Source of the DNA: Macrostomum lignano
Taxonomy: Eukaryota
Direction of reading: 5' to 3'
Assembly (NCBI GenBank): GCA_002269645.1
Contig: NIVC01001402.1
Span: 62,001 to 126,000, forward strand
Length of the DNA stretch: 64,000 nucleotides
Part shown: piece after piece, positions 13,275-40,679 of the stretch
Numbering within the stretch: position 1 is the stretch's first letter
How the letters are laid out: the number at the start of each line of letters is the position of its first letter
Translations under genes and position numbers: made by a program
The notes under the pieces: model-generated
What the model was told of the DNA's origin: nothing
The model's database searches: none
What the model saw: the letters and a program-made list of their open reading frames with translations, nothing else

Positions 13275-13930
13275 TACCCACATCCTGTTCCCTGTATCCT
13301 TAGCAACCCCACATAATGTTCCCTGTGCCCTTAGCAACCCCACATAATGTTCCCTGTGCCCTTAGCAACCCCACATAATGTTCCCTGTGCCCTTAGCAAC
13401 CCCACATAATGTTCCCTGTGCCCTTAGCAACCCCACATAATGTTCCCTGTGCCCTTAGCAACCCCACATAATGTTCCCTGTGCCCTTAGCAACCCCACAT
13501 AATGTTCCCTGTGCCCTTAGCAACCCCACATAATGTTCCCTGTGCCCTTAGCAACCCCACCTCCTGTTCCCTGTCTCTTTAGCAACCCCACATCCTGTTC
13601 CCTGTGTTCTTAGCAACCCCACATCATGTTCCCTGTGCCCTTAGCAACCCCACATCCTGTTCCCTGTGTTCTTAGCAACCCCACATCATGTTCCCTGTGC
13701 CCTTAGCAACCCCACATCCTGTTCCCTGTGTTCTTAGCAACCCCACATCATGTTCCCTCTGCCCTTAGCAACCCCACATAATGTTCCCTGTGCCCTTAGC
13801 AACCCCACATCCTGTTCCCTGTGTCCTTAGCAACCTTGCATCCTGTTCTCTGTGTCCTTAGTAACCCCAAATCATGTTCCTTGTGTCCTTAGCAACCTCA
13901 CATCCTGTTGAACTTAGCAACTCCTAATGA
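13275..13930. repeat. 31-bp minisatellite (cttagcaaccccacataatgttccctgtgcc)n
   Basis: tagcaacccc at 13301, 13332 and onward; about 20 copies, degenerating at the 3' end. Confidence 0.95.
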
Positions 13931-14122
13931 ACTTAGCAACGCACCCCTATTAGACTGTTTCCAGTAATCCTAGCAGCAACACATCCTCTTTCCAGTGCCT
14001 TAGCAACGGCACACTTTGTCCCAAGTGTCATTAGAGCAACTGATCCCGCAGCGCATATTAACTTGCCGCACCCACCCGATGCTCTCGACTCCCTACTGAA
14101 GCAGCCCCAGTCCAGCCCAGCC

Positions 14123-14656
14123 ATGCTAAACGCGGCCGCAGATTTCCTGGCCGCCTACGGCTGGCCTCTCCTCATCGGAGTCTGCGCTGCCGCTTTCATC
14201 TACTCGCGCTACGTTCGGCCCGCGGCAGCCGCTGCCGCCCAGCGCGCCCGCGCCGCCGCCGCCAAGCGGTCGGACTCGGCGGCTGACAGCGAGGAGTTCG
14301 CAGCCAGACAGGCCCGCGTTGCCGAGGCCCGCGAGAGACAGCTCCGCCAGCTGCAGCTGGATGCAGAGCAGCGGGCGGCCAAGCAGGTGGAGGCCACCGC
14401 TGCCAACAGCGCCTCAGCCTCTGCCGGCTACGTGCCTGGCCAGCCCGGCCGCAATCGCCGCTCGCTGCTGAAGTACACTGGCGACGAGACCGACGCCGTC
14501 TCCGCCGCTCAGCAGCGGCGCAATGCCTCTAAAGGCGGCAGCGGCGGCGGCAAGCGACGCCTTCGCGATGAGTACAACCCGCTGGTCGGCGACTCGGGAG
14601 CGGCGGCCCGCTACCGCCCGCCGCCCTGCACCAGTGCGGGTGGCGGATGAGGCTAA
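14123..14656 (+). CDS. SELENOS: Selenoprotein S (SelS/VIMP); in-frame UGA at 14648-14650 inferred to be selenocysteine, true stop TAA at 14654-14656
   Basis: FLAAYGWPLL TM segment, a coiled-coil, then KRRLRDEYNPLVGDSGAAARYRP...GGG-TGA-GGC-TAA, parallel to human SELENOS (LLATYGW ... LRGGGYNPLSGEGG ... GGUG*). A SECIS-like element lies ~450 nt downstream. An upstream exon or start codon is not excluded. Confidence 0.9.
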
Positions 14657-16406: not shown

Positions 16407-16883
16407 ATGAAGCTTGAGTTGTGCAGCTTCTCCGGATTCAAGGTGTACCCCGGCCGCGGCCGCTGGCTGATCCGCACCGACGGCAAGACCTTCCACTTCC
16501 TAAATTCGAAGTGCGAGCGCTCCCACTTCCAGAAGAAAAATCCACGCGAGGTCAGCTGGACTGTGCTGTACCGGCGCAAGCACAAGAAGGGCCAGGTGGA
16601 AGAGGCCGCGAAGAAGAAGTCGCGCAAGTCGCACAAGGCCATCCGGGCGGTGGCCGGCCTGTCCATGGCCGACCTCATGGCCAAGCGCAACCAGAAGCCG
16701 GAGTTCCGCAAGGCCCAGCGAGAGCAGGCGGTCCGCAACGCCAAGGAGAAGGCCAAGGCCAAGGAGGCCGAGAAGAAGGCGCAGAAGCAAGCAGAGGCCA
16801 AGCAGTCCCGCCCCGCCGGCCAGAAGCAGAAGGCGGCCAAGGTCATGAAGCCCACCGCGCCACGGGTTGGCGGCAAGCGCTAA
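16407..16883 (+). CDS. RPL24: 60S ribosomal protein L24 (eL24), intronless CDS
   Basis: [19 protein letters not shown]...[14 protein letters not shown]...[18 protein letters not shown]...PRVGGKR; AG acceptor (ttacag) 11 nt before the ATG. Confidence 0.97.
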
Positions 16884-17809
16884 TTGAGACTCAATTATCC
16901 AGTCCGAGTTCCCCTTCGCCATTTGTTTCCCCACCACTCCAGTAGCCATTGTTGACGCGTTGCTTTTGCCTAATGTGATCTGGTAATATGAGGAGATTGT
17001 GAGAAAAAGAAATAATTAACCACTGGAACTAAAATTGCTTGCTGCCGTTTGCTTTCAACAGTTTTTGTTTTTTTGTTTTTCTCGGCTGAAGAATTAATTA
17101 CACCTTACTTCGCTACGCTAAAGAGCTTACGCTAAAGAGATTTAGCGGACGATCTGTTTTCTAAAAAAAAGAGAGCAAAAAGTGATCCTTCATTTTTGGC
17201 TGCTGTGTGACGAGTACTACTGGGGAAGTGTTGTTCGAAGGCTTATACGCTTTTACGTTTGCAAAAATTCACATTCTCGAGGTCAGGTAAATCTATGGTA
17301 CGAGGTACTAGCAATCATCACCACCCGTTGGGGAGCCAACAAACAATGGAATAATTTTTTTCATGAACTACATGAGGTTTCTGACCTCAGACTTGTTGGC
17401 ATCTCAGCCATTCTGAATCCCGCAAGTCTTGATATCTCAGCAATGATTGAACATACTTAATAGTAGAATTATAGCAATCTACAGCACATATAATAAACCC
17501 GGCACCGGCATTCTGAAGATCTAGTGTAAATTTACATGCGCTCATTGTGCACAATTACTAAATAGTGAGGTAAACCAAATTTGCGACTGTTGCTTGTAAA
17601 TGCACACTTCTTTCAAAACTTATCAGAAAAGATCCGCATAGAAAATCGTCCCGATAAGGAAAACTTTTACTAGGCCCTATCTTGTAGAAGCTTGGATGAC
17701 AATTGATCGATGTCGCGCAATTGGAAACAGTTGGTTCCTTCATAATCATTCGTTTGGAGTATACTCTATTGAAAGCTGTTGTCAGTTTGCGTTGATGGGT
17801 GTTACACAG

Positions 17810-20263
17810 CACCCGACGACAACCGGCTAGCCGGGCCAAAAGCTTACAAAATCATCGGGCTAACCGGCAGGAAAGCGCGCTTTCGAGCTCTCGCTTCTCC
17901 CGGCTAGACGGGCCCAAAGCGCGCTCCCATACAATCAAATGGGAGTGTATCAATTGAAAGCTTTTAACGGGTGTTTAATAACAATTTGCAGTATAAAAAT
18001 CGACGTTTGTTAATATTAATTCGCTTGCATGTAATTTGAAAACAAAATTTACAGGAATGAGCTAGGGTTCCTGTGTTCAACGTTCAACAAAAGCTTTTAA
18101 GGCATATTTGTTGTGCTACTGTGCATTGCTGTGCTGGCCTATGCACTAGACTAAACAAGTGAAGGCTTCGTGTACAAGATAAATGAAAGGAGCTTTTCTG
18201 AAATTTCTTGTGCATTATTATGTTATTGCTTAAGTAATTTTGTTCTATAGTTTAAGCTTGTCACGTGTTAGTTAATTAATAATACAGGCATTTGAAATAT
18301 AAATGTAGGTCTAATATTTTGAGAAGTAACTTATAAGCTGCTTTTATTCAATTATAAAAAGGCTTCAATTCAATTAAATTCTATTTATTTAGCTATAGCC
18401 CTATGTATGTAGGAAAGCCTATTGAGCACTAAGCCTGGGCCTAGCTTATTGACTGACTTGGTCTTAATGAATAGATTTAGCTAACTTACTAGATAAGAGC
18501 CTTAAAATTTTTGTTTTTTCTATCTATCTACTTTATGTATACCAATAGGCCTAGACTAAATAGCAAACTATAAAACTAAGCCTACAATATTTTATATCAA
18601 ATACCTGATGTTTGACTTATTTTCCTTTCCTTAGTTCCCCTCTCCCCTAACCTTGGATTTCCTCCTTCTAACCCTGGCTTCCCTTCCTTGACCTTGGCTT
18701 CCCTCCCCCTGACCCTGGCTTCTCTCCTTACTGACCCTGGTTTCTCTCCTCCCCTGACCTTGGCTTCTCTCCTCCCCTGACCTTGGCTTCCTTCCCCTAA
18801 CCCTGGCTTCTCTCCCCTTGACCCTGGCTTCTCTCCACTTGGCCCTGGCTTCTGTCCCCCTGACCCTGGCTTCCCTTCCCTGATCCTGGCTTCTCTCATC
18901 CCCTGACCCTGGCTTCTCTCCTCCCGTGACCCTGGCTTCTCTCCTTCCGTGACCCTGGCTTTTCTGTGCCTGGCCCTGGCTTCTCTCTCCCTGACCCTGG
19001 CTTCCCTCTCTTGACCCTAGTTTCTCTCCCCCTGACCCTTGCTTCTCTCCGCCTGGCCTGGCTTTTCTCCTTACTGCTGACCCCTGGCTTCTCTCTCCCT
19101 GACCCTGGCTTCCCTCCCCTGACCCTCGCTTCCCTGCCCTGACCCTGGCTTCCCTCCCCTGATCCTGGCTTCTCTCCCGCTGGCCTTGGCTTCCCTCCCT
19201 TGACCTTGGCTTCTCTCCCCAGACCCTCGCTTCCTTCCCCTGACCCTGGCTTCCCTCCACCTGGCCCTGGCTTCTCTCCCCCTGACCCTGGCTTCCCTCC
19301 CTTGACTCTAGCTTTTCTCCCCCTGACCCTGGCTTCTCTCCGCCTGGCCTTGGCTTCCCTCCCTTGACCCTGGCTTCACTCCCCTGACCCTGGCTTCTCT
19401 CCGCCTGGCCTGGCTTTTCTCCTTACTGACCCCTAGCTTCTCTCTCCCTGACCCTGGCTTCCCTCCCCTGACCCTGTCTTCTCTCCTCCCCTGACCCTGG
19501 CTTCTCTCTTTACTGACCCTGGCTTCCCTCTCTTGACCCTAGCTTCTCCCCCCCTGACCCTGGCTTCCCTCCACCTGGCCTGGCTTCTCTCCTTACTGAT
19601 CCCTGGCTTCTCTCTCCCTGACCCTGGCTTCCCTCCCCTTACCCTGGCTTCTCTCCTTACTGACCCCTGGCTTCTCTCTCCCTAACCCTGACTTCCCTCC
19701 CCTGACCCTGGCTTCTCTCCCCTGACCCTGGCTTCTCTCCTCCCCTGGCCCTGGCTTCTCTCCCCTGACCCTGGCTTCCCTCCCCTGACCCTGGCTTCTC
19801 TCCTCCCCTGACTCTGGCTTCCCTCCCCTGACCCTGGCTTCCCTCCCTCTTGACCCCTGGATTCCCTCCCTCCTGACCCCTGTTTCCTTCCCTCTTGACC
19901 CATGGCTCCCTCTCTTGTTCGCCCATGGCCCTCCTTCTCCCATGGCTCGCTCCCTTCTTTTTTAAACATCTCTCCTGACCCCTCTTGACCCGTAACTTCT
20001 GCCCTGCTCTGCCCTCTTGCTCTGACGTCTGCTGTCTGCTCTACCTTGCTCCTTTGCCCCCTGCTTTTCTGTCCTCTGGTTTTCTGCCCCCTGCTCTGCC
20101 CCCGCTGCTTTGCTCCCTGCTGTCTGCTCTACCCTGCTTCTCCGCCCTCTGCTAAAGTAGTCTCGTATTAGTACCAAGCAGCACAGCTTATTGAAAGCAC
20201 ATTCTTCCTTCAGAAAAAGCTACCGGTGAAGCCCAGCTGCTGTCCCATTGGCACCTTTGCTTT
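17810..20263 (+). repeat. Left TIR arm, with internal (ctgaccctggcttc...) sub-repeat array at ~18650-19900
   Basis: Reverse complement of 27150-29821; identical 100-aa spurious ORFs at 18597-18899(-) and 28732-29034(+). Confidence 0.92.
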
Positions 20264-22258
20264 TGCCTCTGGTGCGATTGGCCTAGCAACAAACAAGCAG
20301 CTGTTCACCCACAAAAGCTATCCAAGCGCGAGCTTTCTACTATGTGTGCACACTGAGCTGAAATTAGTTTGTACGTACCGCCACTATGAGTTCTGATACG
20401 CTGACATCTGGTGCAACCGTTACGGCCGGGTCTGCCGCTGGTTCCGCTTAAGCAGCCGCCTCAAACATCGCTGCTGCAGCCGAAACTGAAGCTGGCTCCG
20501 CCAAAGCTATTTTTTAATTCGACAATTCTTTTAACATTTAGATCACCGAATTCTGTTAATACATGTTCAGATCTTGTAAAGCTCAACAAAAGCACCCATT
20601 TGTCATCGCCCTTTTCCAATATTGCTACTCGCATTACTCCCTGTGCAATGGGAGCCACACTCAATGTTTTTGGTGTCGTGTTTTTAGGTTGTTTATGGGT
20701 GGATTTTCTATTTGTAAAAGCATTTTTCGAGTCAATGCAGTTTGTAACATCGGAGTATCATATATTTTTGCTGTGATTTCTGGGAGACATTTTTTCGAGA
20801 CGATACTGCTCTGTGACAGGGTGGTGTTCAACGTGTGCCATTTTAATTCAATCCTTGATCACAAAGCTCGGAGCAAGTGCCCCTAGACTTCAGTGTCAGG
20901 CTTTCAGTTTAAGCAAATAATCCAAAATAATTTCGGCTGTACCATTGTGGACCAACAATGACCAACCCCTTATACTGTCAAAATCCTGTTGTTTTTACAG
21001 GTTCTTATATTTCTACTAGGAACTGACAGGTGTCTTTTGTTGTTACCGCCAGTTATTTTTTTAAACATTACTGCTCTTCATGAAGATGCGTGCAAAAAAT
21101 ACAGATATAAACTTTCATGTTACATACAGTTATGACCAGGAGCTTTCCGATTTTAGTTGGTCATATAATTTTGTCGAAAACTTGGTTTTGTGTTTCTGGA
21201 GTATTTCTTAAATAGCATGCGCTCCGCAAAATTTTGTTGATTTAGCTTTACACTCCAGAAGTAAAATTTTCTCAGTGAACTCACATTTTATTTCGCTCTT
21301 AGTGGTGCAGCTTAAGCATGTTTCGAATGCTCCCAGCAAGCTGCCGAGAGTTCCTGCACTGGCAAGAAAGGACGCTGCCTGTTAATGGTGTCTTAGTAAA
21401 AGTGCTCAAGAGAGAAATCTTCATGCGATTCTGATGAGCGCTCACCCTGGTGGGCCATGGGTATTCCGGCTATAGTGGTTGCATGGAGCAAACCTGAGGC
21501 AGGGGTCTAGCAAGGAAGACTCACTTATTGTGTATTAAAAATTTACGCATATTCATACATGTAGGGTCGAATTGGGCTTCAGCAACGCAGGGGAAGCGGC
21601 AAAATAAGGGCGGGGGCTCGCAGCAGTCTACTGATTCAGTCGGACTGCTAGTCTGGGGAGCTGTCAAAACAGCCGATGCGCGGTGCACCACTGCACCAGC
21701 TGCCGATGCTGCTTCAGTCGCCTACCAACCTGTTCGCGCTGCCAGGAGCGAACTACAAATTAAGTTTTTCCGCTCGATCCAAGTCATGTGACGAAACCCA
21801 GGGGCTGCCTGAGAATATCTGTGTAAACCTCTGGGCTCTAGCGCTGAAAATTACCAGCCGCCATGCATGCCTCACATGGACTTCTCCACCTCTGGATGCT
21901 GTTTTGTAGCTGACGTTGCGGTCAAGTTTCAATTATCTCGACAGCGCGGGCCCGGGTTGTTTGTTTGCCGAAGGGCGTGGCCGCCTCTGCAGTCACTTGT
22001 GTAGGAGTACACCCGAAAAACTCGACACTACTAGAAATGGCACGTACATTTACATGTAACACTCTAATGGACTCTATTCGAGGAGGCATACAAGGGACGG
22101 TTTACTTGTAATCAGTGCTGGAAATGAGGAATTTAAAGACTTTTGCATAAGGGGGATCTTTAGTTGGTGGGCGACTCTATAGGAAATGAAGCTGGGGTTC
22201 CCGGCGGGGACCGCGGTGGTTCGGTCTCGCGGGAAAACAAACAATAATTAAAACAAAT

Positions 22259-22560
22259 TTGTATCACCGCGCCGGCCTGGTGCGTCCAAGCGACCTGTTG
22301 CGCCGTCGGCGACTCCAGCTGGCAGGCCACATCATCCGCGCCGAGTCGTACTGGCCAAAGCCGGTGCAGGAGGTGCTGCTGCTGACGCTGCAGGCACCGG
22401 CCCTACCGGCGGGGACAGGCGCGCACTCGGCGTTTCGACTCGACTAGCTGCCTGCTGGCTGATGCTGGCGCCCCGGAGCCGGCGGCGTGGCGTTCATTCG
22501 CAACCTGGCCTTGAGGCGCGCCGTGTGACGCTGACTGCGTATTCTGTTGTTGTTGTTCTG
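22259..22560 (+). mobile_element. 3' fragment of a non-LTR retrotransposon (RTE-like C-terminus) with a (TTG)n tail
   Basis: YHRAGLVRPSDLLRRRRLQLAGHIIRAE...; closely similar to the reverse complement of 44720-44960; ends ctgttgttgttgtt. Confidence 0.75.
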
Positions 22561-23834
22561 GTACGTGGCGCGGCTATGCCTTTTGGCGTGTACCTATAAA
22601 AAACCCGGATCAGCCGCTAGTTTTGTTCAGGGGAGCTTGACCACTAATCAAGCATACACTATCAACAGCCGAGAGTGTTCAACTAAATTACAGCAGGATG
22701 CATACTATAGAGAGCGAGTTCTAGGGAGTCTTCACTGGAATCAGTGTGTAATCGCAATTGTACTTCTTCGTACGTACGTATGGTCAAGTCACTTGGCTAT
22801 TATTCTGTTACATGTAATTTCTAGCTCATGTAACTGTATAAATGATGCATGGGATGTACGTATATGATACATGTGTAGATCACAGTTTGTGTGTTCCACA
22901 AGTCATAAATAATGTTACCAATATGGCATGATAAACATGGCCATGTACATGTATGCGCCTTATTGTAGGTAGAAACTGTGTTCAGGTATATTCTATTGTA
23001 TGTCAATACATTTTGCACTTACATGTATAGTCGTAGAGTTCACGTCCTGGAAAGCAATTACTCGTAGCACATGTGCATGAAGCTGTGATTCTTATTTTAA
23101 AGAAGATTCTTAACCAAATTTCTAAACAGTCCAGAGGTGCACGCACTAAATTCAGGGAACGGCAGGAGTCGCATGCGGACGTCCGTTCTGTCTTCCGTGT
23201 ACTTCTACATGTACGTATATAAGAAATTCCATTGAAGCCATTCAGAATCGCTTCCGTACTTTATTGGTGCTCTCCCAAGTGCTAATGACACCTCCTCGCT
23301 ACGCCCCAACATTGGCACCTACACAGAACACACTAACACCTAACCTCATCTTTTAATGAGTTGCATAGCGCTATGCGTGATGAAGTACTGTACGAGTAAC
23401 GCAAGTTACTATCGATAATAATCTCAAAATTCTATCCCTTTTGTAACAGCCCGAAATAGATGAACTCGATCCAATATATCGACGAGCTACAGTGTATAGT
23501 GCATGTGTATCGATTTATACCACTTTCTAGAATGTATCCTATTGTACACCACACCACTCAGCACCCAACACACCACCTTACTCAATGCAGGTACATTATA
23601 TCGCAGAAGTCACATAAGCGCTGGAAGAAATATTTATTAAATTGTTAGAAATCGACAGTAACTCGTACATGTACAAGGGTACATACGTAATTGTATGTGG
23701 CGCTTTCATCAATAAGGCTTTTTAGCATGTCTTAGTTTTTTAAACAAACGAACTAAAACAAGTTTATTAGAGCATACTTAAGGTCTTAAAAATAGCGTCA
23801 CACAGCTATATTCCCCTAGTACAGGAAGTTCCCA

Positions 23835-24300
23835 AAGCACTTCTCTGGCTAGAGTTGGCGCTAGAGGAACTCGCTAAGATGGGATTCAAAAATGGTCACT
23901 AGCGCCATGCTGGCTGCAAAACTTCGCCTTCACGAGTGCCCAGGTGCCTTCGATGTTGTTTGTGGGCACAGTTGGATCGTTCGGATCAACGAAATGCAGA
24001 CGGTGATTGAAAAACACCTGGGGAAGCGCACTATATACCTGCCAGCCGTCAGTTAAAATGCGTGTCCCAGGCAACACACTGCTGAATAATCTGACTCAGC
24101 AGACCGGTTGGGTACTTGTACCATCATGCATTTGCGTGTACCTTGCTCGACCATCCCAAGCACCCAGTGGCCCTCGCGGTAAGCTCCCTGGTGGTATTTG
24201 CGATGAAAAAAATGGACTCATCCACTTCAACTTCTCTTCCTTTTATTGGCTTTTTTATTATTGCAAGCAAAAAAGAACAATTATTTCTCAGTTTTCGTAC
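23835..24300 (-). pseudogene. Decayed Merlin (IS1595/ISXO2-like DDE) transposase
   Basis: Across frameshifts: VEVDES..RKYHQG..GHWVLGMVE..LPGTRILTDGWQVY..NHRLHFVDPND..TNNIEGTW..EFL*R, the ISXO2/Merlin motif order. Confidence 0.8.
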
Positions 24301-24614
24301 AACATATCCTTTATTTTTTTCTCGCTTATCGCACATTCCATTGTCAGCTGCTAGTATTTTCTCTGTCGTTTGTCAAAAAATGGCACAATTCAGGTACACT
24401 AAATGGCACACTATAATAAAAAACGAGAAAAGAACACGGACAATTCGATTTAACAATTCCACAAGACTTAGCAACAGCCGCAAAAACCAACGTACCACGA
24501 CGTGAACACCTACAAGTCAACTTATGATTTTTTGACCAAAATATAAAATATGCAGAAGGTACAAGTGGTCAGTTCAGCCACACTGTTAGAGCGCGACGAC
24601 AGTACTTTGGTCAA

Positions 24615-26715
24615 ACCTCTCAGCTCTCAACTTCCGCCACCTTCCCGCTCTCAGCTCCTGCCACCTTCCCGCTCTCAGCTCCCGCCACCTTCCCGCTCTC
24701 AGCTCCCGCCACCTTCCTGCTCTCAGCTCCCGCCACCTTCCCGCTCTCAGCTCCCACCACCTTCCCGCTCTCAGCTCATGCCACCTTCCCGCTCTCAGCT
24801 CCCGCCACCTTCCCGCTCTCAGCTCCCGCAACCTTCCCGCTCTCAGCTCCCGCCACCTTCCCGCTCTCAGCTCCCACCACCTTCCCGCTCTCAGCTCCCA
24901 CCACCTTCCCGCTCTCAGCTCATGCCACCTTCCCGCTCTCAGCTCCCGCCACCTTCCCGCTCTCAGCTCCCACCACCTTCCCGCTCTCAGCTCCCGCCAC
25001 CTTCCCGCTCTCAACTCCCGCCACCTTCCCGCTCTCAGCTCCCACCACCTTCCCGCTCTCAGCTCCCGCCACCTTCCCGCTCTCAGCTCATGCCACCTTC
25101 CCGCTCTCAGCTCTCGCCACCTTCCCGCTCTCAGCTCATGCCACCTTCCCGCTCTCAGCTCTCGCCACCTTCCCGCTCTCAGCTCCCGCCACCTTCCTGC
25201 TCTCAGCTCCCACCACCTTCCCGCTCTCAGCTCCCGCCACCTTCCCGCTCTCAGCTCATGCCACCTTCCTGCTCTCAGCTCCCGCCACCTTCCCGCTCTC
25301 AGCTCCCGCCACCTTCCCGCTCTCAGCTCCCGCCACCTTCCCGCTCTCAGCTCCCGCCACCTTCCCGCTCTCAGCTCCCGCCACCTTCCCGCTCTCAGCT
25401 CCCGCCACCTTCCTGCTCTCAGCTCCCGCCACCTTCCTGCTCTCAGCTCCCGCCACCTTCCCGCTCTCAGCTCCCGCCACCTTCCCGCTCTCAGCTCCCA
25501 CCACCTTCCCGCTCTCAGCTCATGCCACCTTCCCGCTCTCAGCTCCCGCCACCTTCCCGCTCTCAGCTCCCACCACCTTCCCGCTCTCAGCTCCCACCAC
25601 CTTCCCGCTCTCAGCTCCCGCCACCTTCCCGCTCTCAGCTCATGCCACCTTCCTGCTCTCAGCTCCCGCCACCTTCCCGCTCTCAGCTCCCGCCACCTTC
25701 CCGCTCTCAGCTCATGCCACCTTCCCGCTCTCAGCTCCCGCCACCTTCCCGCTCTCAGCTCCCACCACCTTCCCGCTCTCAGCTCCCGCCACCTTCCCGC
25801 TCTCAACTCCCGCCACCTTCCCGCTCTCAGCTCCCACCACCTTCCCGCTCTCAGCTCCCGCCACCTTCCCGCTCTCAGCTCATGCCACCTTCCCGCTCTC
25901 AGCTCTCGCCACCTTCCCGCTCTCAGCTCCCACCACCTTCCCGCTCTCAGCTCATGCCACCTTCCCGCTCTCAGCTCTCGCCACCTTCCCGCTCTCAGCT
26001 CCCGCCACCTTCCTGCTCTCAGCTCCCACCACCTTCCCGCTCTCAGCTCCCGCCACCTTCCCGCTCTCAGCTCATGCCACCTTCCTGCTCTCAGCTCCCG
26101 CCACCTTCCCGCTCTCAGCTCCCGCCACCTTCCCGCTCTCAGCTCCCGCCACCTTCCCGCTCTCAGCTCCCGCCACCTTCCCGCTCTCAGCTCCCGCCAC
26201 CTTCCTGCTCTCAGCTCCCGCCACCTTCCTGCTCTCAGCTCCCGCCACCTTCCCGCTCTCAGCTCCCGCCACCTTCCCGCTCTCAGCTCCCGCCACCTTC
26301 CCGCTCTCAGCTCCCACCACCTTCCCGCTCTCAGCTCATGCCACCTTCCCGCTCTCAGCTCCCGCCACCTTCCCGCTCTCAGCTCCCGCCACCTTCCCGC
26401 TCTCAGCTCCCACCACCTTCCCGCTCTCAGCTCATGCCACCTTCCCGCTCTCAGCTCTCGCCACCTTCCCGCTCTCAGCTCCCGCCACCTTCCTGCTCTC
26501 AGCTCCCACCACCTTCCCGCTCTCAGCTCCCGCCACCTTCCCGCTCTCAGCTCCCGCCACCTTCCCGCTCTCAGCTCCCGCCACCTTCCCGCTCTCAGCT
26601 CCCGCCACCTTCCCGCTCTCAGCTCCCACCACCTTCCCGCTCTCAGCTCCCGCCACCTTCCCGCTCTCAGCTCCCGCCACCTTCCCGCTCTCAGCTCCCG
26701 CCACCTTCCCGCTCT
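24615..26715. repeat. 24-bp minisatellite (ccaccttcccgctctcagctcccg)n, ~87 copies
   Basis: Direct inspection; a stop-free unit divisible by 3 explains the 728/736-aa ORFs. Confidence 0.97.
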
Positions 26716-27149
26716 CCTCGCCTCTGCCAAAATTAGATATGGCTTGTCAATGCATGGCTTTTGTGTTATGGCTATTGGTGATTTGTGAAACCTCACTAAC
26801 GGTGATCGGAAGTACTAATGCATGTATATGTGCATGCATAGAGTACATGAGAAAGAAACTAACAAGTTATGGATAAAAGTAGAGCAAGGGTAAAAGGTAC
26901 AGATAAACAAAGTTAAAAAATTGACTGTAAATAAAGCTAACATGAACTGTCAATGATACGAATTTCCATTTGCTGACAGCTCAAGACAAAATGCTTTCAA
27001 CGACCGTTCCATTCTGAGCTAACTTTGATACGATCACCGCATTGCTGAAGGTTATGGTACGCTTTGCACCGACTGTAGCGTTCGAGGCGGCTGTTCGAGC
27101 AGAACCAGCGGCAGTCCCGGCCGCAGCAGCGTTGTTCGAGACGGTGACC

Positions 27150-29821
27150 AAAGCAAAGGTGCCAATGGTACAGCAGCTGGGCTTCAACGGTAGCTTTTTC
27201 ATAAGGAAGAATGTGCTTTCAATAAGCTGTGCTGCTTGGTACTAATACGAGACTACTTTAGCAGAGGGCGGAGAAGCAGGGTAGAGCAGATAGCAGAGGG
27301 CAGAGCAGGAAGCAAAGCCGTGCGGACAGAGCAGAGGGCAGAAAACCAGGAGGCAGACCAGGGGGGGAAGAGCAAGGAGGCAGAGCCACTGGTCAGGAGT
27401 GAGGGAAGCCATGGGTCAGTAGAGAAAGCCATTGGTCAGGAGAGAGGGAAACAAGGGTCAGGAGTGAGGGAATCCAGGGTTCAGGAGAGAGGGAGCCATG
27501 GGACAGGAGGGAGGGAAGCCACGAGTCAGAAGGGAGGGAATCTACAGGTCAGGAGGGAGGGAAACTGTGGGTCAGGAGGGAGGGAAGCCAGGGGTCAGGA
27601 GGGAGGGAAGCCAGGGTCATGGGGAAGAGAAGCGAGGGTCAAGGGGAGAGAAGCCAGGGTCAGGGGGAGAGAAGCTAGGGTCAGGGGGAGAGAAGCCAGG
27701 GTCAAGGGAGGGAAGCCAGGGTCAGGGGAAGGAAGCCAGGGTCAGGGGAAGAGAAGCCAGGGTCAAGGGAGGGAAGCCAGGGTCAGGGGAGGGAAGCCAG
27801 GGTCGGGAAAAGAAGCCAGGGTCAGGGGAAGGAAGCCAGGGTCAGAGCAGGGAAGCCAGGGTCAGGGGGAGAGAAGCCAGGGGTCAGTAAGGAGAAAAGC
27901 CAGGCCAGGCAGAGAGAAGCCAGGGTCAGGGGAGAGAAGCCAGGGCCAAGTGGAGAGAAGCCAGGGTCAAGGGAGGGAAGCCAGGGTCAGGGGGAGAGGA
28001 GCTAGGGTCAAGGGAGGGAAGCCAGGGTCAGAGGAGGGAAGCCAGGGTCAGGGGAGGGAAGCCAGGGTCAGTGGAGGAGAGAAGCCAGGGTCAGAGGAGG
28101 GAAGCCAGGGTCAGGGAAGAGAAGCCAGGGGTCAGTAAGGAGAAAAGCCAGGCGAGGCAGAAAGAAGCCAGGGTCAGGGGAGGAGAGAAGCCAGGGTCAA
28201 GGGAGGGAAGCCAGGATCAGGGAAGGGAAGCCAGGTTCAGGGGGACAGAAGCCAGGGCCAAGTGGAGAGAAGCCAGGGTCGGGGAGAGAAGCCAGGGTCA
28301 GGGGGAGAGAAGCCAGGGGTCAGTAAGGAGAAAAGCCAGGCCAGGCAGAGAGAAGCCAGGGTCAGGGGGAGAAGCCAGGGCCAAGTGGAGAGAAGCCAGG
28401 GTCAGGGGAGGAGAGAAGCCAGGGTCAAGGGAGGGAAGTCAAGGTCAGGGGGAGAGAAGCCAGGGTCAGGGGAGGGAAGCCAAGGTCAGGGAGAGAGAAG
28501 CCAGGGGTCAGTAAGGAGAGAAGCCAGGGTCAGGGGAGGAGAGAAGCCAGGGTCAGGGGAGGAGAGAAGCCAGGGTCAAGGGAGGAAAGCCAAGGTCAGG
28601 GGGAGAGAAACCAGGGTCAGGGAAGGGAAGCCAGGGTCAGGGAGAGAGAAGCCAGGGCCAGGCACAGAAAAGCCAGGGTCACGGAAGGAGAGAAGCCAGG
28701 GTCACGGGAGGAGAGAAGCCAGGGTCAGGGGATGAGAGAAGCCAGGATCAGGGAAGGGAAGCCAGGGTCAGGGGGACAGAAGCCAGGGCCAAGTGGAGAG
28801 AAGCCAGGGTCAAGGGGAGAGAAGCCAGGGTTAGGGGAAGGAAGCCAAGGTCAGGGGAGGAGAGAAGCCAAGGTCAGGGGAGGAGAGAAACCAGGGTCAG
28901 TAAGGAGAGAAGCCAGGGTCAGGGGGAGGGAAGCCAAGGTCAAGGAAGGGAAGCCAGGGTTAGAAGGAGGAAATCCAAGGTTAGGGGAGAGGGGAACTAA
29001 GGAAAGGAAAATAAGTCAAACATCAGGTATTTGATATAAAATATTGTAGGCTTAGTTTTATAGTTTGCTATTTAGTCTAGGCCTATTGGTATACATAAAG
29101 TAGATAGATAGAAAAAACAAAAATTTTAAGGCTCTTATCTAGTAAGTTAGCTAAATCTATTCATTAAGACCAAGTCAGTCAATAAGCTAGGCCCAGGCTT
29201 AGTGCTCAATAGGCTTTCCTACATACATAGGGCTATAGCTAAATAAATAGAATTTAATTGAATTGAAGCCTTTTTATAATTGAATAAAAGCAGCTTATAA
29301 GTTACTTCTCAAAATATTAGACCTACATTTATATTTCAAATGCCTGTATTATTAATTAACTAACACGTGACAAGCTTAAACTATAGAACAAAATTACTTA
29401 AGCAATAACATAATAATGCACAAGAAATTTCAGAAAAGCTCCTTTCATTTATCTTGTACACGAAGCCTTCACTTGTTTAGTCTAGTGCATAGGCCAGCAC
29501 AGCAATGCACAGTAGCACAACAAATATGCCTTAAAAGCTTTTGTTGAACGTTGAACACAGGAACCCTAGCTCATTCCTGTAAATTTTGTTTTCAAATTAC
29601 ATGCAAGCGAATTAATATTAACAAACGTCGATTTTTATACTGCAAATTGTTATTAAACACCCGTTAAAAGCTTTCAATTGATACACTCCCATTTGATTGT
29701 ATGGGAGCGCGCTTTGGGCCCGTCTAGCCGGGAGAAGCGAGAGCTCGAAAGCGCGCTTTCCTGCCGGTTAGCCCGATGATTTTGTAAGCTTTTGGCCCGG
29801 CTAGCCGGTTGTCGTCGGGTG
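27150..29821 (-). repeat. Right TIR arm, with (gaagccagggtcagggg...) sub-repeat array at ~27540-28960
   Basis: Reverse complement of 17810-20263, with a different sub-repeat copy number. Confidence 0.92.
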
Positions 29822-30392
29822 TACACAGGTACTTAGCAAAAAGAGAGAAATGAAATAGTACAGGGACCATGTACTGTAGTACAGCCTGATGTGCGAGACA
29901 ATGATTAAGCAGCAAAAATAAAAAGTAAAACAATTGAACCAAAATTTTCTCCACCAATATAGAACTCTAAAACGATCTGATAAAAAATCAGGATACATGC
30001 TTAGAACCAGGTAAACAAAAATTCTAGGCCTACGTGAAAATTAGATTACTATTTTGGCGTCATTAGACCATTTAACTCGACAACGTCGCGCATTATCTGG
30101 GCCGTCACAGCACCGACCCGATAAATAGAAAGTAGCAATTGTATCTCTATTTTAGGTAATACTAGCATTCCCTAGCAATGTTACAAAGCTTTAACTAAGA
30201 CAGGAAATTTTTGGATTGTCGAAAACCTCAATCGATTGATTTTTGATCACTAAGTTCGATACTAATTCATTTTTTATTTGGTCATACACTGTACTGTACA
30301 CCATTGTGAATACAGGCTGTAGTCAGCTTAATTTTGCTCAATAAGCAGGGTTCATCGTTAAAGTTTTATTAATAAGAAGAAGTTATTTCAAC

Positions 30393-33300
30393 ATGGACAC
30401 AAAAAGGAGACTAACATATTTAATGATTGCACTTTACTTTTTCCTTTCTGGAGTGGAATATGGTATGTACAAGTACTATGGGCTATCCTAAAAATTACTT
30501 TAAAAAAACTAAAAATTTTAAAACTAAAATTCAGGGCTGATGTCCTCATTATCCTACTTAATGCATTTTTTGTTTACTGTTAGGTATTTACATGTTTTTT
30601 TAGATTACAAACACTGTTTATACACTATGATTGGCTATTGTTTAGAAAATTAAACATAGGCCTAATCATTAATTTGTACTATTAAATTAATTAGGCCTAC
30701 TTATATTAAAATTATATAAGCCTTAATATAGTTAAACCAAATATTAAACAATATGTTATTTAGCAATCAAAATATTTTGTAAGTATTTTTACAACCTTTC
30801 ACTTTGCTTTGTTTACTATACTCCATAGCATTGCCTTAGTGTAGTCTTAGAGAATACCTTGATATAGATATACCAATGCCATTTGACTGATTTAAATTAG
30901 CTAGGGGCCACAGGCATAGGCCAACATTGATTTTATTTGCAACTTTTATATTAATTTTGAAATCAAGAATCCAAGATGCCATTTGGTTAACATGCAGGAT
31001 TAGGAAAATTCCACTATATTCAAAATAGGATATGGGTGTATTATTTTTTTATTTCAAACAATAAGGCCTATGGTATAGCCAATGAGGCTATAGTTTTTAT
31101 AGGAAGAGAAGTAATATATTATTGTAAAATGCTTGGTTTTACTTGTAATATCAAATTTTATATTTTTATAGTGCATTTTACACAAAATATTTCTTAAGCC
31201 AAAAGCCACTAGTGATAACCTCGTAAAAAAATTGTCTGAATTATTAAAAAAAGCTCCACCATTTTTGAAATGCACTAAATCTAATACAAGTAACTAGTTT
31301 AGTCTGAACTATATGCATCAGAAAAAAAAATCTAAATAAAATTACTTGGAATATCTACTCTACCCAACTAGTAGTGCATAGGCCTACATTGTGCTTTGCA
31401 TTGGCCAAGAATTCCAAGCACAATGTAGGCCTATGCACTACATCGCATCGCACTCTCCTTGTCTTGTGTACATTCCACATAATTTCTTACACATTACACT
31501 CGCTTTAACCCTCGTGCACAGCCGTGATCCTGCCCACCATGTGGCTGTACATCCACGAGAACTTTGGAGCCACCTCTGCGTTCTTGGGCCTCATGCTGTC
31601 AGCCTTCAGCATCTCCGACCTTTTCTGCTCGCCAATCTATGGCAGGTGAGACTGGGTTGCTGTCTCGAGGTAGCGGTGAATGTAGAGGTCCTCTGGTGCA
31701 ATGCACACAGAACAGACAGCGACTACCTCAAAATTGAGCAGACAGTAGGCACTGAACAGCGGTTTACTGGATGAGTAGACAGTGGTTTACTGGATGAGTA
31801 GACAGTGGTTTACTGGATGAGTAGACAGTGGTTTACTGGATGAGTAGACAGCGGTTTACTGGATGAGTAGACAGGGGTTTACTGGATGAGTAGACAGGGG
31901 TTTACTGGATGAGTAGACAGGGGTTTACTGGATGAGTAGACAGGGGTTTACTGGATGAGTAGACAGCGGTTTACTGGATGAGTAGACAGCGGTTCACTGG
32001 ATGAGTAGACAGGGGTTTACTGGATGAGTAGACAGTGGTTTACTGGATGAGTAGACAGCGGTTTACTGGATGAGTAGACAGCGGTTTAATGGATGAGTAG
32101 ACAGCGGTTTACTGGATGAGTAGACAGCGGTTTACTGGATGAGTAGACAGCGGTTTACCGGATGAGTAGACAGCGGTTTATTGGATGAGTAGACAGCGCT
32201 TTACTGGATGAGTAGACAGTGGTTTACTTGAAGAGTAGACAACAGTTTACTGAGGAATAGACAGCGGTTTACTAAAGTAGACAGCGGTTCCCTGAAGGAG
32301 TAGACAGCGGTTTACTTGAAGAGTAGACAACAGTTTAGTTTACTGAGGAGTAGACAGCGGTTTACTAAAGTAGACAGCGGTTCCCTGAAGGAGTAGACAG
32401 CGGTTTACTTGAAGAGTAGACAACAGTTTACTGAGGAGTAGACAGCGGTTTACTAAAGTAGACAGCGGTTCCCTGAAGGAGTAGACAGCGGTTTACTTGA
32501 AGAGTAGACAACAGTTTACTGAGGAGTAGACAGCGGTTTACTAAACCTGTGCTAAGACATTTGTTTGCAAATGTCGCTTGGTTTTCCGCAGAATATCTGA
32601 CAAGTACAGGTGCACCAAATACCTGGTGATCTTCTCCAACCTGTGGGAGATCGGCGGCAACATCATGTACTTTATGGGCATCTCGCTGCCCTTCCTGCTG
32701 TGCAGCCGCTTTGTGACTGGTGCGTTCGCTGTGGACAGCTTTGCTTTGATGGTGGCAGAATAGTGTGATTGATGGCTTAGACAGTGTGATTGATGGCTTC
32801 AACAGTTTGATTGATGGCTTAGACAGTGTGATTGATGGCTTAGACAGTTTGATTGATGGCTTCGACAGTGTGATTGATGGCTTAATCCCAGACAGCTTGA
32901 TCCTATACAGTTTGATCCCAGACAGCTTGATCCCAGACAGCTTGATCCCTGACAGCTTACAGTTAGATTTTACCAAAACAGACAGCTCAGGTGGTTTTTC
33001 GCCCCTATCTCAAATCCCACCCCACCGCAGGCGTCGGTGCCGGGGCTGGCGCGGCCATCGTGTCGGACATCGCCCGCGCCACAAACGTCAGGGAGCGGAC
33101 AGGGGTGATCGCGATTCTAATGGCGTGCCGGCAAGTCGGCCTGGTCATTGGTGAGGCTGGGCAAGTCGATTTTTTGTTAATCCTGATTAACCCGAAATCC
33201 CGGCTGCGACCCCCGCAGGCCCCGGCTGCAACCTGTTCCTCCGCCTGGTGAACACCAGCATCGGGCCCTACCCACTCACTGCCTACTCGGTGCCGGGCCT

Positions 33301-36300
33301 CTTCATGGCCAGCCTGTGGCTGCTGCACACCCTGCTCAGCCTCTGCCTGTACACCGACTTCCACCGGATGGCGCCGCCCGATGACGGCGATGGTGACGAC
33401 GAGCGGCGGCGACTTGTGGCTGACGGCGACGGGGTTGGCTATGAGGCTGTGGCTGCGGCGGCGCCCGAGCCAGAGCCGCCCGCGCTGGTCACCGACCGGC
33501 GCTACTATGTTAATGGTGGGTGACTGTTGCAGCTTATATCAGGCCATAGACGTGCAGCTGTTATCAGGCCATAGACGTGCAGCTTATATCAGGCCCTAGA
33601 CGTGCAGCTTATATCAGGCCCTAGACAGCTTATATCAGGCCCTAGACGTGCAGATTATATCAGGCCCTAGACGTGCAGCAGCTTATATCAGGCCATAGAC
33701 AGCTTATATCAGGCCATAGACATGCAGCTTATATCAGGCCATAGACAGCTTATATCAGGCCATAGACAGCTTATATCAGGCCATAGACAGCTTATATCAG
33801 GCCATAGACAGCTTATATCAGGCCATAGACGTACAGCTTATATCAGGCCATAGACAGCTTTTATCAGGTCATAGACGTACAGCTTATATCAGGCGATAGA
33901 CAGCTTATATCAGGCCATAGACGTGCAGCTTATATCAGGCCATAGACGTACAGCTTATATCAGGCCATAGACAGCTTTTATCAGGTCATAGACGTACAGC
34001 TTATATCAGGCCATAGACAGCTTATATGAGGCCATAGACGTGCAGCTTATATCAGGCCATAGACAGCTTATATCAGGCCATAGACGTGCAGCTTATATCA
34101 GGCCATAGACGTACAGCTTATATCAGGCCATAGACAGCTTATATCAGGCCATAGACGTGCAGCTTATATCAGGCCATAGACGTGCAGCTTATATCAGGCC
34201 ATAGACGTGCAGCTTATATCAGGCCATAGACGTGCAGCTTATATCAGGCCATAGACGTGCAGCTTATATCAGGCCATAGACAGCTTATATCAGGCCATAG
34301 ACGTACAGCTTATATCAGGCCATAGACGTACAGCTTATATCAGGCCATAGACAGCTTATATCAGGCCATAGACGTACAGCTTATATCAGGCCATAGACAG
34401 CTTATATCAGGCCATAGACGTACAGCTTATATCAGGCCATAGACAGCTTATATCAGGCCATAGACAGCTTATATCAGGTCATAGACATGCAGCTTATATC
34501 AGGCCATAGGCAGCTTATATCAGGCCATAGACGTGCAGCTTATATCAGGCCATAGACAGCTTATATCAGACCATAGATATGCAGCTTATATCAAGCGATA
34601 AACATGCAGCTTATATCAAGCGATAAACATGCAGCTTATATCAAGCGATAGACATGCAGCTTATATCAGGCCATAGACAGCACACATCAGCACATCGGAC
34701 GATAGACAGCAGCAGACAAGAAGAATCTAACTTAAAAGCACTAACGTTTAAAAGCAAATTGTGTTCCCCTTTTGCAGAGTACCTTCGTCACGAGTTGGTT
34801 GCCATCTTGGCCACTATCTTTGCCACCTTCTTCAACCAGACTGCTCTTGAGGTAAGTCCAGTTGTGTGCTGTGTTAAATGAAGTTTCTCATATCTGATAG
34901 TCAGATCTCTGCGCCCCGTAGGCCATGCTGACACCCCTGACCAAGGACTACCTGGGCTGGGGAGAATTGGGCAACAGCCTGCTGTACCTCGGCGCCGGCG
35001 TGGAAGTCATCCTAGTCTTCATGGTGGTCCGCTGCGCCAGCAGCCGCTTCTACGACAGCAGCCTGATCCTGCTAGGCTCGGCGGTGTCCGCTGCCGCCAT
35101 CGCCGGCATGCTGGTCTACTTCCCGCTGGCAGTGCCGGGTTTGTATTGTTTTCCATGATTATATTTTTCATGTTGCATCTTTTTCTTCTACTTATAGTAG
35201 AAATGCAAACATTTTGTCTTTATCTATGTAAATTGCATTCAAATTGCACTGTAAATACTGGGTGTGAGTCAGCCATATTCAGTTTCTTGCCAAAATATTA
35301 AGTCAAGGACAGCTACGAGCTAATTACCGCTAAGTCACCACCTGAATATTTGCTTTTATTTATTACCGTTCCAGGCAACGAGCTCAACCTGCCTATGCTA
35401 ATTGGCAGCGTCTTCTTGGACGTGATTGCTTTGCCCTTCCTTGTCACCTGCTCCGTGTCGCTTTATTCGAAAATCACCTCACCAGCAACTCAGGGTAATT
35501 TGCCTGCAGGCAGTCAAAATAATCATGGCCTCTAAGTCTTGAACCAACTCATGCATTTCAGGCTTCTCGCAGGGCCTCCGGCGCTCTGTTATCGGACTGT
35601 CCACCATCATGGGACCTCTGTGGGCCGGGTCCATGCTGACCAGACTGAGCATCATGCTGGCCGTGCTGCTGTCCCTCATTCTGCTCATGATGGTGAGTGC
35701 CTGAGCTGCTGTCCCTCATTCTTCTCATGATGGTGAGTGTCTCAGCTGCTGTCCCTCATTCTGCTCATGATGGTGAGTGCCTGAGCTGCTGTCCCTCATT
35801 CTGCTCATGATGGTGAGTGTCTCAGCTGCTGTCCCTCATTCTGCTCATGATGGTGAGTGCCTGAGCTGCTGCTGTCCCTCATTCTGCTCATGATGATGAG
35901 TGCCTGAGCTGCTGTCCCTCATTCTGCTCATGATGGTGAGTGCCAGAGCTGCTGTCCCTCATTCTGCTCATGATGGTGAGTGTCAGAGCTGCTGTCCCTC
36001 ATTCTGCTCATGATGGTGAGTGCCTGAGCTGCTGCTGTCCCTCATTCTGCTCATGATGGTGAGTGCCTGAGCTGCTGCTGTCCCTCATTCTGCTCATGAT
36101 GGTGAATGCCTGAGCTGCTGCTGTCCCTCATTCTGCTCATGATGGCGAGTGCCTGAGCTGCTGTCCCTCATTCTGCTCATGATGGTGAGTGCCAGAGCTG
36201 CTGTCCCTCATTCTGCTCATGATGGTGAGTGCCAGAGCTGCTGTCCCTCATTCTGCTCATGATGGCGAGTGCCTGAGCTGCTGTCCCTCATTCTGCTCAT

Positions 36301-36841
36301 GATGGTGAGTGCCTGAGCTGCTGCTGTCCCTCATTCTGCTCATGATGGTGAGTGTCTCAGCTGCTGTCCCTCATTCTGCTCATGATGGTGAGTGCCAGAG
36401 CTGCTGTCCCTCATTCTGCTCATGATGGCGAGTGCCTGAGCTGCTGCTGTCCCTCATTCTGCTCATGATGGTGAGTGCCAGAGCTGCTGTCCCTCATTCT
36501 GCTCATGATGGCGAGTGCCTGAGCTGCTGTCCCTCATTCTGCTCATGATGGTGAGTGCCTGAGCTGCTGTCCCTCATTCTGCTCATGATGGTGAGTGCCA
36601 GAGCTGCTGTCCCTCATTCTGCTCATGATGGTGAGTGCCTGAGCTGCTGCTGTCCCTCATTCTGCTCATGATGGTGAGTGCCTGAGCTGCTCATGGAACT
36701 CACGCCATCTGCCACCCGCAGGCCCTGTTCTGTTTGTCGATGCCCAGGCTGAGATGCTACGAGAAAGCGGCAGACTCGGAGAGGCGGCTGAGCAAAACTG
36801 ATGAGGCAGCGGAGTCTGGGCCAGAAACGGTTAATGCATAG
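30393..36841 (+). CDS. MFS transporter, MFSD8/CLN7-like, ~466 aa; exons 30393-30462, 31522-31645, 32592-32719, 33031-33150, 33219-33515, 34778-34851, 34922-35138, 35375-35494, 35562-35692, 36722-36841
   Basis: Ten GT-AG exons join in frame into a multi-TM protein with an MFS motif-A-like PIYGRISDKYRC, VILPTMWLYI and SKITSPATQGFSQG segments; the subfamily is assigned from recall. Confidence 0.85.
31371..31441. repeat. Perfect 26-bp inverted repeat with a 19-nt loop, in MFS intron 1
   Basis: GTAGTGCATAGGCCTACATTGTGCTT ... AAGCACAATGTAGGCCTATGCACTAC. Confidence 0.9.
31757..32545. repeat. 23-bp minisatellite (gagtagacagcggtttactggat)n in MFS intron 2
   Basis: Period 23 (31773, 31796...); variant units in the 3' half. 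Confidence 0.95.
32765..32960. repeat. 21-bp and 15-bp minisatellites in MFS intron 3
   Basis: tgattgatggcttagacagtg and ttgatcccagacagc units. Confidence 0.85.
33525..34680. repeat. 21/25-bp minisatellite (cagcttatatcaggccataga[cgtg])n in MFS intron 5
   Basis: Direct inspection; begins ~10 nt after the donor at 33516. Confidence 0.95.
35666..36690 (+). repeat. 40/43-bp array made of the exon-9 3' end plus the 5' splice site, ~25 copies
   Basis: Unit gctgtccctcattctgctcatgATG|GTGAGTgcctgagct; the first copy is the real exon/intron junction at 35692/35693. Confidence 0.93.

Positions 36842-37641: not shown

Positions 37642-40679
<3,038 letters not shown>

What the first reader, a model, noticed from the sequence alone, without database searches (positions are those of the whole stretch)
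17803..29828. 12-kb foldback element: 2.5-kb TIRs with internal tandem repeats and a 7-bp TSD
Kilobase TIRs, internal sub-repeat arrays, CAC termini and a 7-bp TSD recall Drosophila Galileo (P superfamily foldback), a known generator of inversions. No THAP/P transposase is visible inside. The interior instead holds cargo: a Merlin pseudogene, a LINE tail, a 2-kb minisatellite and unexplained sequence. It may be an undescribed non-autonomous giant element able to form a multi-kb cruciform, sitting between RPL24 and the MFS gene.
Basis: partly seen in the sequence, partly recalled or inferred. Interest (0 to 1): 0.75.

Follow-up and report, generated by a model that had tools for sequence, protein, structure and literature searches.

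The report
Foldback-type transposon insertion, non-autonomous
This is a real 12-kb mobile DNA element of the well-known "foldback" type, with two long inverted arms full of short tandem repeats, no working gene of its own and a 7-bp target duplication; it is a new example of a known kind rather than a new kind of element.

Summary
A 12,012-bp element (17810-29821) has inverted arms of about 2.66 kb and 2.74 kb. Its ends read 5'-CAC...GTG-3', and a perfect 7-bp direct repeat, TACACAG, abuts each end. Each arm has the modular layout described for foldback (FB-like) transposons: an AT-rich unique outer domain, a 20/41-bp tandem array and an inner unique domain. Between the arms is a non-coding middle domain. 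It holds a frameshifted Merlin (IS1595-type) transposase remnant, a 5'-truncated LINE tail and a 2.1-kb minisatellite with a 24-bp unit. No THAP/P, MULE or hAT transposase is present, so the element is non-autonomous.

One new detail: the outermost 1,198 bp of the two arms are 100% identical. Identity then falls abruptly to about 88-90% with many indels, which suggests recent arm-to-arm conversion.

The superfamily is unresolved. A 7-bp duplication together with long inverted ends fits the P superfamily (Galileo, 1360). It argues against Mutator/FB (8-10 bp), Merlin (8-9 bp, GG ends) and Dada (no inverted ends, inserts in small-RNA genes). This rests on one copy, because no other copy could be retrieved from any collection available here.

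Verdict: a real, ordinary-to-moderately interesting new member of a known kind.

The parts
17803..17809 (.). Left target-site duplication TACACAG
   Evidence: Read directly; identical to 29822-29828.
17810..18641 (+). Left arm, outer unique domain (832 bp, 36% GC), starting CACCCGACGACAACCGG
   Evidence: 100% identical to the reverse complement of 28992-29821; composition; no long ORFs.
17823..17843 (+). Subterminal 21-bp motif, copy 1 (CCGGCTAGCCGGGCCAAAAGC). Copy 2 is at 17900-17920. Mirror copies lie at 29788-29808 and 29711-29731. Candidate transposase-binding sites (inferred).
   Evidence: 4 matches in the window against 0.02 expected. The palindromic cores pair in a DNA fold of the terminal 151 nt, z = -2.6.
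18642..19912 (+). Left arm tandem array, 20/21-bp unit with a 41-bp higher-order period, about 57-61 units, 62% GC, C/T-rich on the + strand
   Evidence: TRF. The first 366 bp are identical to the right arm; identity breaks at 19008.
19913..20466 (+). Left arm inner domain, including a 159-bp left-only insert at 20264-20422
   Evidence: BLAST of the inner ends; 20105-20263 vs 27150-27308 is 95% identical.
20467..27079 (.). Middle domain (6.6 kb), no intact coding capacity
   Evidence: ORF list; six-frame Pfam scans; no nested element with inverted ends and a duplication of 7 bp or more.
22262..22560 (+). 5'-truncated LINE 3' end (ORF2 C-terminal motif ...RRRRLQLAGHI...), followed by a (TTG)n run
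   Evidence: 80% identity to 44689-44951 (-), downstream of the RT motif ALFIDFREAFDSI at 45189-45227.
23889..24231 (-). Merlin / IS1595-type DDE transposase pseudogene (at least 2 frameshifts, plus stops)
   Evidence: PF12762 E=0.0019 on the raw frame; E=3e-8, 34.2 bits, with the frameshifts bridged.
24623..26716 (+). 24-bp minisatellite, 87 copies, 94% unit identity, 68% GC
   Evidence: TRF; composition.
27080..27390 (-). Right arm inner domain
27391..28991 (-). Right arm tandem array (about 76 units), 330 bp longer than the left array
   Evidence: TRF; indel pattern in the arm alignment.
28992..29821 (-). Right arm outer unique domain, ending ...CGTCGGGTG
29822..29828 (.). Right target-site duplication TACACAG

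Best explanation
This is a single insertion of a non-autonomous class II transposon with terminal inverted repeats and foldback (FB-like) architecture.

Shown:
- Two long inverted arms end precisely at 5'-CAC...GTG-3' and are bracketed by a 7-bp target-site duplication.
- Each arm has an outer unique domain, a tandem array and an inner domain.
- The 6.6-kb middle domain has no working gene. It holds only a decayed Merlin transposase, a LINE tail and a minisatellite.

Inferred:
- The element was cut out and pasted in by a DDE-type transposase encoded elsewhere in the genome. That enzyme makes 7-bp staggered cuts in the target.
- The enzyme recognises the outermost ~130 bp, where a 21-bp motif with a palindromic core occurs twice per end.
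- The tandem arrays grow and shrink by slippage or unequal exchange, so the arms differ by 330 bp.
- The arms exchange sequence by intramolecular gene conversion or by template switching during gap repair. This would explain why the outer 1,198 bp are identical while the rest is 3-12% diverged.
- The Merlin and LINE pieces are old passengers or nested insertions, not the element's own machinery.
- Among described superfamilies, the length of the target duplication points to P (Galileo/1360-like). The superfamily remains undetermined.
For: - Arms and their extent.
- Termini and duplication. The terminus is unique to the two ends in the window.
- The subterminal motif occurs 4 times against 0.02 expected.
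- Arrays.
- No transposase other than the Merlin remnant.
- The identity step falls at 19008/28623: 0 mismatches in 1,198 bp, then 12-23 mismatches plus indels per 200 bp.
- Published FB-like layout, with lack of ORFs: Tetris, PMC4079207.
- Tandem repeats in the arms, unequal arm lengths and arm exchange in Galileo: PMC3573991.
- 7-bp duplications in Galileo: PMC4168063.
Against: - Only one copy is available, so mobility is inferred from structure alone.
- No autonomous partner was seen.
- No empty site was observed.
- The perfect identity of the outer 1.2 kb could partly come from consensus polishing of a long repeat rather than from biology.
Confidence: 0.85

Rival explanations
1. It is specifically a P-superfamily, Galileo-like foldback element, mobilised by a THAP-domain P-type transposase.
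For: A 7-bp duplication is the Galileo norm (PMC4168063). Long inverted arms with internal tandem repeats and unequal arm lengths match Galileo (PMC3573991). The other superfamily with 6-7-bp duplications, Dada, lacks inverted ends and targets small-RNA genes (PMC3706591). Neither property fits here.
Against: No THAP or P transposase domain is in the element. The duplication TACACAG does not match GTANTAC (PMC4168063). Similarity of the end sequences to Galileo, 1360 or P could not be tested. The host's RPL24 is closest to flatworm and mollusc proteins at only 62-64% identity, so it is probably not a fly. The foldback shape has arisen independently in several superfamilies (PMC4079207).
Confidence: 0.25
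2. It is a Mutator/Foldback-type element (like FB, Tm1, Tetris or Phantom), mobilised by a MULE transposase.
For: Most described foldback elements are assigned to Mutator (PMC4079207, PMC3169594). Arms built of short tandem units, as in Tm1 (PMC3169594), resemble the 20-bp arrays here.
Against: Duplications in these families are 8-10 bp, mostly 9 (PMC3169594, PMC4079207). Here it is exactly 7 and cannot be extended to 8. No MULE domain was found.
Confidence: 0.12
3. The Merlin remnant is the element's own decayed transposase, making this a Merlin element with hugely extended inverted ends.
For: It is the only transposase-like sequence between the arms.
Against: Merlin elements have inverted ends of 24-462 bp with conserved 5'-GG termini and 8-9-bp duplications (PMC8101967). 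Here the ends are 5'-CA, the arms are about 2.7 kb and the duplication is 7 bp. The remnant is far more decayed than the arms.
Confidence: 0.03
4. It is not a transposon. It is an inverted segmental duplication (a palindrome made by replication template switching) or an assembly artefact.
For: The outer 1.2 kb of the arms is perfectly identical, as young palindromes or collapsed or polished repeats would be. The genome is very rich in tandem repeats, which are hard to assemble.
Against: The 7-bp direct repeat abuts both arm ends exactly (chance about 6e-5). The arms differ in array length by 330 bp, and by 3-12% in their inner parts. A 6.6-kb non-palindromic spacer separates them. Foldback read artefacts give spacer-less perfect palindromes.
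Confidence: 0.05

Closest known systems
Foldback-like elements as a structural class (Drosophila FB; Tetris of D. virilis)
   Same: Long inverted arms, each with an outer unique domain, internal tandem repeats and an inner domain. A middle domain of variable composition without ORFs. Flanking target duplications. Unequal arm lengths caused by array size (PMC4079207).
   Different: Tetris has 8-10-bp duplications and 220-bp repeat units. Here the duplication is 7 bp and the units are 20/41 bp. This copy is larger (12 kb). The host is apparently not an insect.
Galileo (P superfamily, Drosophila)
   Same: 7-bp duplication, arms of a kilobase or more with internal tandem repeats, many non-autonomous copies, exchange between arms (PMC4168063, PMC3573991).
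   Different: No THAP/P transposase is seen here. The duplication sequence does not fit GTANTAC. The arms are about twice as long as the longest reported Galileo arms (about 1.26 kb in PMC3573991). Relatedness of the end sequences was not tested.
Tm1 (Mutator/Foldback, root-knot nematodes)
   Same: Composite inverted arms built mainly of short (13-15 bp) tandem units, with specific end motifs; many non-coding members (PMC3169594).
   Different: Tm1 has a 9-bp duplication, a Phantom-type MULE transposase and elements of only 1-2.6 kb.

Membership tests
Foldback-like elements (structural class) | Long terminal inverted repeats with a modular layout: outer domain, internal tandem repeats, inner domain | tested here: met
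   definition from PMC4079207.
Foldback-like elements (structural class) | Middle domain of variable composition with no conserved ORF | tested here: met
   only a Merlin pseudogene and a LINE tail.
Foldback-like elements (structural class) | Flanking target-site duplication | tested here: met
   TACACAG on both sides.
Foldback-like elements (structural class) | Repeated in the genome at different loci | not testable with these tools
   No second copy in the window. Hits in the public collections were chance matches. The host genome is not in the collections.
P superfamily (P, 1360, Galileo) | Transposase with an N-terminal THAP domain and a P-type DDE/D(2)H catalytic domain | tested here: not met
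   Absent from the element in six-frame Pfam scans. A partner elsewhere in the genome cannot be tested.
P superfamily (P, 1360, Galileo) | 7- or 8-bp target-site duplication | tested here: met
   7 bp; Galileo 7 bp and P 8 bp per PMC4168063.
P superfamily (P, 1360, Galileo) | Target preference GTANTAC within a palindromic motif (Galileo) | tested here: inconclusive
   TACACAG with non-palindromic flanks, but a single site cannot test a preference.
P superfamily (P, 1360, Galileo) | Terminal ~40 bp similar to Galileo/1360/P ends | not tested
   No reference end sequences were available in the tools.
Mutator/Foldback (FB, Tm1, Tetris, Phantom) | 8-10-bp (mostly 9-bp) target-site duplication | tested here: not met
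   Exactly 7 bp; the 8th bases differ; PMC3169594, PMC4079207.
Mutator/Foldback (FB, Tm1, Tetris, Phantom) | MULE-type transposase in autonomous members | tested here: not met
   No MULE or Transposase_mut hit in the element.
Merlin | DDE_Tnp_IS1595 transposase | tested here: met
   Pseudogene at 23889-24231 (-), PF12762 E=3e-8.
Merlin | 8- or 9-bp duplication, inverted ends of 24-462 bp with 5'-GG termini (PMC8101967) | tested here: not met
   7-bp duplication, 5'-CA termini, arms of about 2.7 kb.
Dada | 6-7-bp duplication, no terminal inverted repeats, insertion inside tRNA or snRNA genes (PMC3706591) | tested here: not met
   The duplication length fits, but long inverted arms are present and no tRNA or Rfam RNA gene lies at the site.

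The most novel reading that the evidence does not exclude
The element represents an undescribed family of giant non-autonomous foldback transposons in a non-insect animal. It would be mobilised either by a Galileo-like P-type transposase, which would extend P-superfamily foldback elements outside Drosophila, or by a so far undescribed transposase that makes 7-bp duplications. Its arms would be actively kept identical at the tips by arm-to-arm copying.
Probability: 0.2. Interest if true: 0.5.

Novelty: new member of a known kind. Interest (0 to 1): 0.3.

Why it matters
Long inverted repeats of this size are recombination and replication hazards. Galileo copies have generated natural chromosomal inversions (PMC2775673), and foldback arrays have seeded satellite DNA (PMC4079207). 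A 12-kb element with 2.7-kb arms about 0.9 kb downstream of a ribosomal protein gene could be a local hotspot for rearrangement. If more copies and an autonomous partner were found, the family would help to show whether foldback architecture with 7-bp duplications is a P-superfamily trait beyond flies. As a single copy it is mainly an annotation result.

Tried and rejected
- **Terminal 28-mer and 20-mer searches.** Nothing was found in metagenome contigs or viral contigs. The single hit in prokaryote genome contigs was a chance 20-mer in a Kofleriaceae MAG with no further similarity.
- **21-bp subterminal motif in metagenomes.** The 4 hits are one GC-rich bacterial locus from one soil study, with no other similarity to the element. 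Rejected as chance.
- **Orthologous or empty site via neighbouring proteins.** Exact look-ups of RPL24 and of a 370-aa ORF found nothing on record. RPL24 homologues reach only 62-64% identity. The host genome is therefore not in the protein or contig collections, and I ran no further search on it.
- **Six-frame Pfam scans of the interior**. Only the Merlin remnant was found.
- **Nested elements in the middle domain.** A scan for elements with their own inverted ends and a duplication of 7 bp or more found none. The Merlin and LINE pieces therefore have no recognisable borders.
- **Each arm as a separate insertion.** Rejected, because the terminus and the duplication heptamer are absent from the inner arm ends.
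- **RNA genes.** Rfam and tRNA scans found nothing.
- **MFS neighbour.** Pfam on guessed exons gave no hit.
- **Superfamily tables of duplication lengths.** Three look-ups by id and one text search failed, and a second text search returned only a Galileo paper already listed. Lengths not covered by the cited papers rest on my own knowledge.
Full report

Yes. The repeat finder reports inverted arms at 17810-19071 and 28560-29821, 1262 nt at 99%. A gapped BLAST extends the match to 17810-19907 vs 29821-27652, at 90% over 2.19 kb. A focused comparison of the inner ends shows 20151-20263 vs 27262-27150 at about 97%. After a 159-bp insert present only in the left arm (20264-20422), there is a further inverted match at 20423-20466 vs 27123-27080, at 86%.

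The element starts CACCCGACGACAACCGGCTAGCC and ends with the exact reverse complement. Immediately outside both ends lies TACACAG, at 17803-17809 and 29822-29828. The next bases outward differ, so the duplication is exactly 7 bp. The bases just outside the arms are not complementary, so the inverted repeat stops exactly at the duplication.

The chance of a 7/7 match at fixed boundaries is about 6e-5. The heptamer is not found near the inner arm ends. The 28-nt terminus occurs only at the two outer ends of the element.

**2. Anatomy**

Each arm has three domains.
- An AT-rich unique outer domain of 832 bp, 36% GC.
- A tandem array with a 20/21-bp unit and a 41-bp higher-order period, 62% GC. 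The left array is 1271 bp and the right is 1601 bp.
- An inner unique domain.

The first 130 bp of each end carry two copies of a 21-bp motif, CCGGCTAG[C/A]CGGGCC[A/C]AAAGC, spaced 77 bp apart. That gives four copies in the window against 0.02 expected. Their palindromic cores can pair when the strand is folded (z = -2.6). I take them as candidate transposase-binding sites; this is an inference.

The middle domain (20467-27079) has no long non-repetitive ORF. Six-frame Pfam scans of 20200-24650 gave only a weak DDE_Tnp_IS1595 hit. Bridging two frameshifts raises this hit to E=3e-8, 34.2 bits, above the gathering threshold. PF12762 is the Merlin marker domain (PMC5751038). So a decayed Merlin transposase lies at 23889-24231 on the minus strand.

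At 22262-22530 (+) the sequence encodes a LINE ORF2 C-terminal motif. It is 80% identical to 44689-44951 (-), which lies downstream of a reverse-transcriptase motif at 45189-45227. A (TTG)n run follows it. This is a 5'-truncated LINE tail.

The 24-bp minisatellite at 24623-26716 has 87 copies. I found no nested element with its own inverted ends and duplication. I also found no tRNA or Rfam RNA gene.

**3.

The arm alignment shows zero differences over the outermost 1,198 bp (17810-19007 vs 29821-28624). This stretch includes the first 366 bp of the arrays. From 19008 onward there are 12-23 mismatches plus 20-80 gap positions per 200 bp. The inner unique sequence is 3-14% diverged.

The step lies inside the tandem array. 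The simplest biological reading is a recent arm-to-arm conversion, or a template switch during gap repair, with its end-point in the array. Concerted evolution, unequal arrays and chimeric arms are documented for Galileo (PMC3573991). A polishing artefact confined to the outer part cannot be excluded without reads.

**4. What it is and how it most likely works**

The structure matches the published definition of foldback-like transposons: outer domain, internal tandem repeats, inner domain, and a variable non-coding middle domain, flanked by target duplications (Tetris, PMC4079207; Galileo, PMC3573991 and PMC4168063; Tm1, PMC3169594).

I conclude, with confidence of about 0.85, that this is one insertion of a non-autonomous cut-and-paste element. 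A DDE transposase encoded elsewhere would have moved it, making 7-bp staggered target cuts and binding the subterminal motifs. The arrays change by slippage and the arms homogenise by conversion. The Merlin and LINE pieces are old passengers.

The structure and the duplication are shown. Mobilisation in trans, the binding sites and the conversion are inferred.

**5. Which superfamily?**

- **Merlin is excluded as the element's own family.** Merlin elements have inverted ends of 24-462 bp with 5'-GG termini and 8-9-bp duplications (PMC8101967).
- **Dada is excluded.** It makes 6-7-bp duplications but has no terminal inverted repeats and sits inside small-RNA genes (PMC3706591).
- **Mutator-type foldback elements do not fit well.** They make 8-10-bp duplications, mostly 9 bp (PMC3169594, PMC4079207).
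- **The P superfamily (Galileo 7 bp, P 8 bp; PMC4168063) is the best fit among described families.** However, its defining THAP/P transposase is absent here. The duplication does not fit Galileo's GTANTAC. Foldback shape has evolved more than once (PMC4079207). I give the P assignment about 0.25.

**6. Other copies and the host**

No other copy could be obtained. Metagenome, viral and prokaryote-genome scans gave nothing or chance hits.

The host is an animal. The window holds a selenoprotein S gene and forkhead-like exons that I read by eye. Its RPL24 is only 62-64% identical to any protein in the collection, and the top hits are flatworms and molluscs. Exact look-ups failed. The genome is therefore not in the available collections.

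The window carries at least 17 separate minisatellite arrays. Tandem arrays are thus a general habit of this genome, not special to this element. What is special is their mirror-image placement in the two arms.

**7. Is it an artefact or a non-transposon palindrome?**

This is unlikely (about 0.05). The precise duplication, the 6.6-kb asymmetric spacer, the unequal arrays and the diverged inner arms all argue against a foldback-read artefact or a simple inverted duplication.

**8. Verdict**

Novelty: a new member of a known kind. Interest: about 0.3. The most novel reading still open is a P-like or undescribed foldback family with 7-bp duplications in a non-insect animal, with active homogenisation of the arm tips (probability about 0.2, interest about 0.5 if true).

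Noticed in passing
window 17810-19007 vs 29821-28624; break at 19008/28623: The two arms are 100% identical for the outermost 1,198 bp. Identity then drops abruptly to about 88-90% with many indels, and the break lies inside the tandem array. This suggests a recent conversion tract, or possibly a polishing effect.
   Followed up: partly
window 17794-17809 and 29813-29828: The direct repeat at the junctions is longer than 7 bp if one gap is allowed. The left flank reads GGGTGTTACACAG. The right arm end plus duplication reads GGGTG-TACACAG. So the target already carried a copy of the element's last 5 bases just before the duplication. This may be chance or a hint of target preference.
   Followed up: no
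window 14063-14656 (+): A selenoprotein S gene (PF06936, E=5e-13). Its ORF ends ...GGT GGC GGA TGA GGC TAA. This is the family's typical C-terminal Gly-Gly-Sec-Gly, with the TGA probably read as selenocysteine. Rfam found no SECIS element at gathering score.
   Followed up: partly
window 16407-16883 (+): RPL24 is encoded in one uninterrupted ORF with no introns. It is only 62-64% identical to any protein in a 5.8-billion-protein collection, and the best hits are trematodes and molluscs. It is either a retrocopy or comes from a fast-evolving, unsampled animal lineage.
   Followed up: partly
whole window, e.g. 13277-13909, 31756-32542, 33528-34681, 35665-36691, 37791-38669, 43406-44148, 51413-52228, 54545-55233, 57953-59550: Minisatellites are unusually dense: at least 17 arrays with 14-45-bp units, each 0.3-2 kb long, roughly one every 3-4 kb. 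Many lie in or next to coding-looking sequence.
   Followed up: no
window 44689-45488 (-): A LINE fragment with a reverse-transcriptase motif (ALFIDFREAFDSI at 45189-45227). Its tail is 80% identical to the piece inside the foldback element.
   Followed up: partly
window 20264-20422: A 159-bp stretch is present only in the left arm's inner domain. The right arm has 26 unrelated bases at that point. It is a small insertion or deletion that arose after the arms were formed.
   Followed up: no
window 709-1978 (-): Two exons encode a forkhead domain ([10 protein letters not shown]... / [13 protein letters not shown]...). By eye they resemble FoxJ2/3, split by an intron.
   Followed up: no
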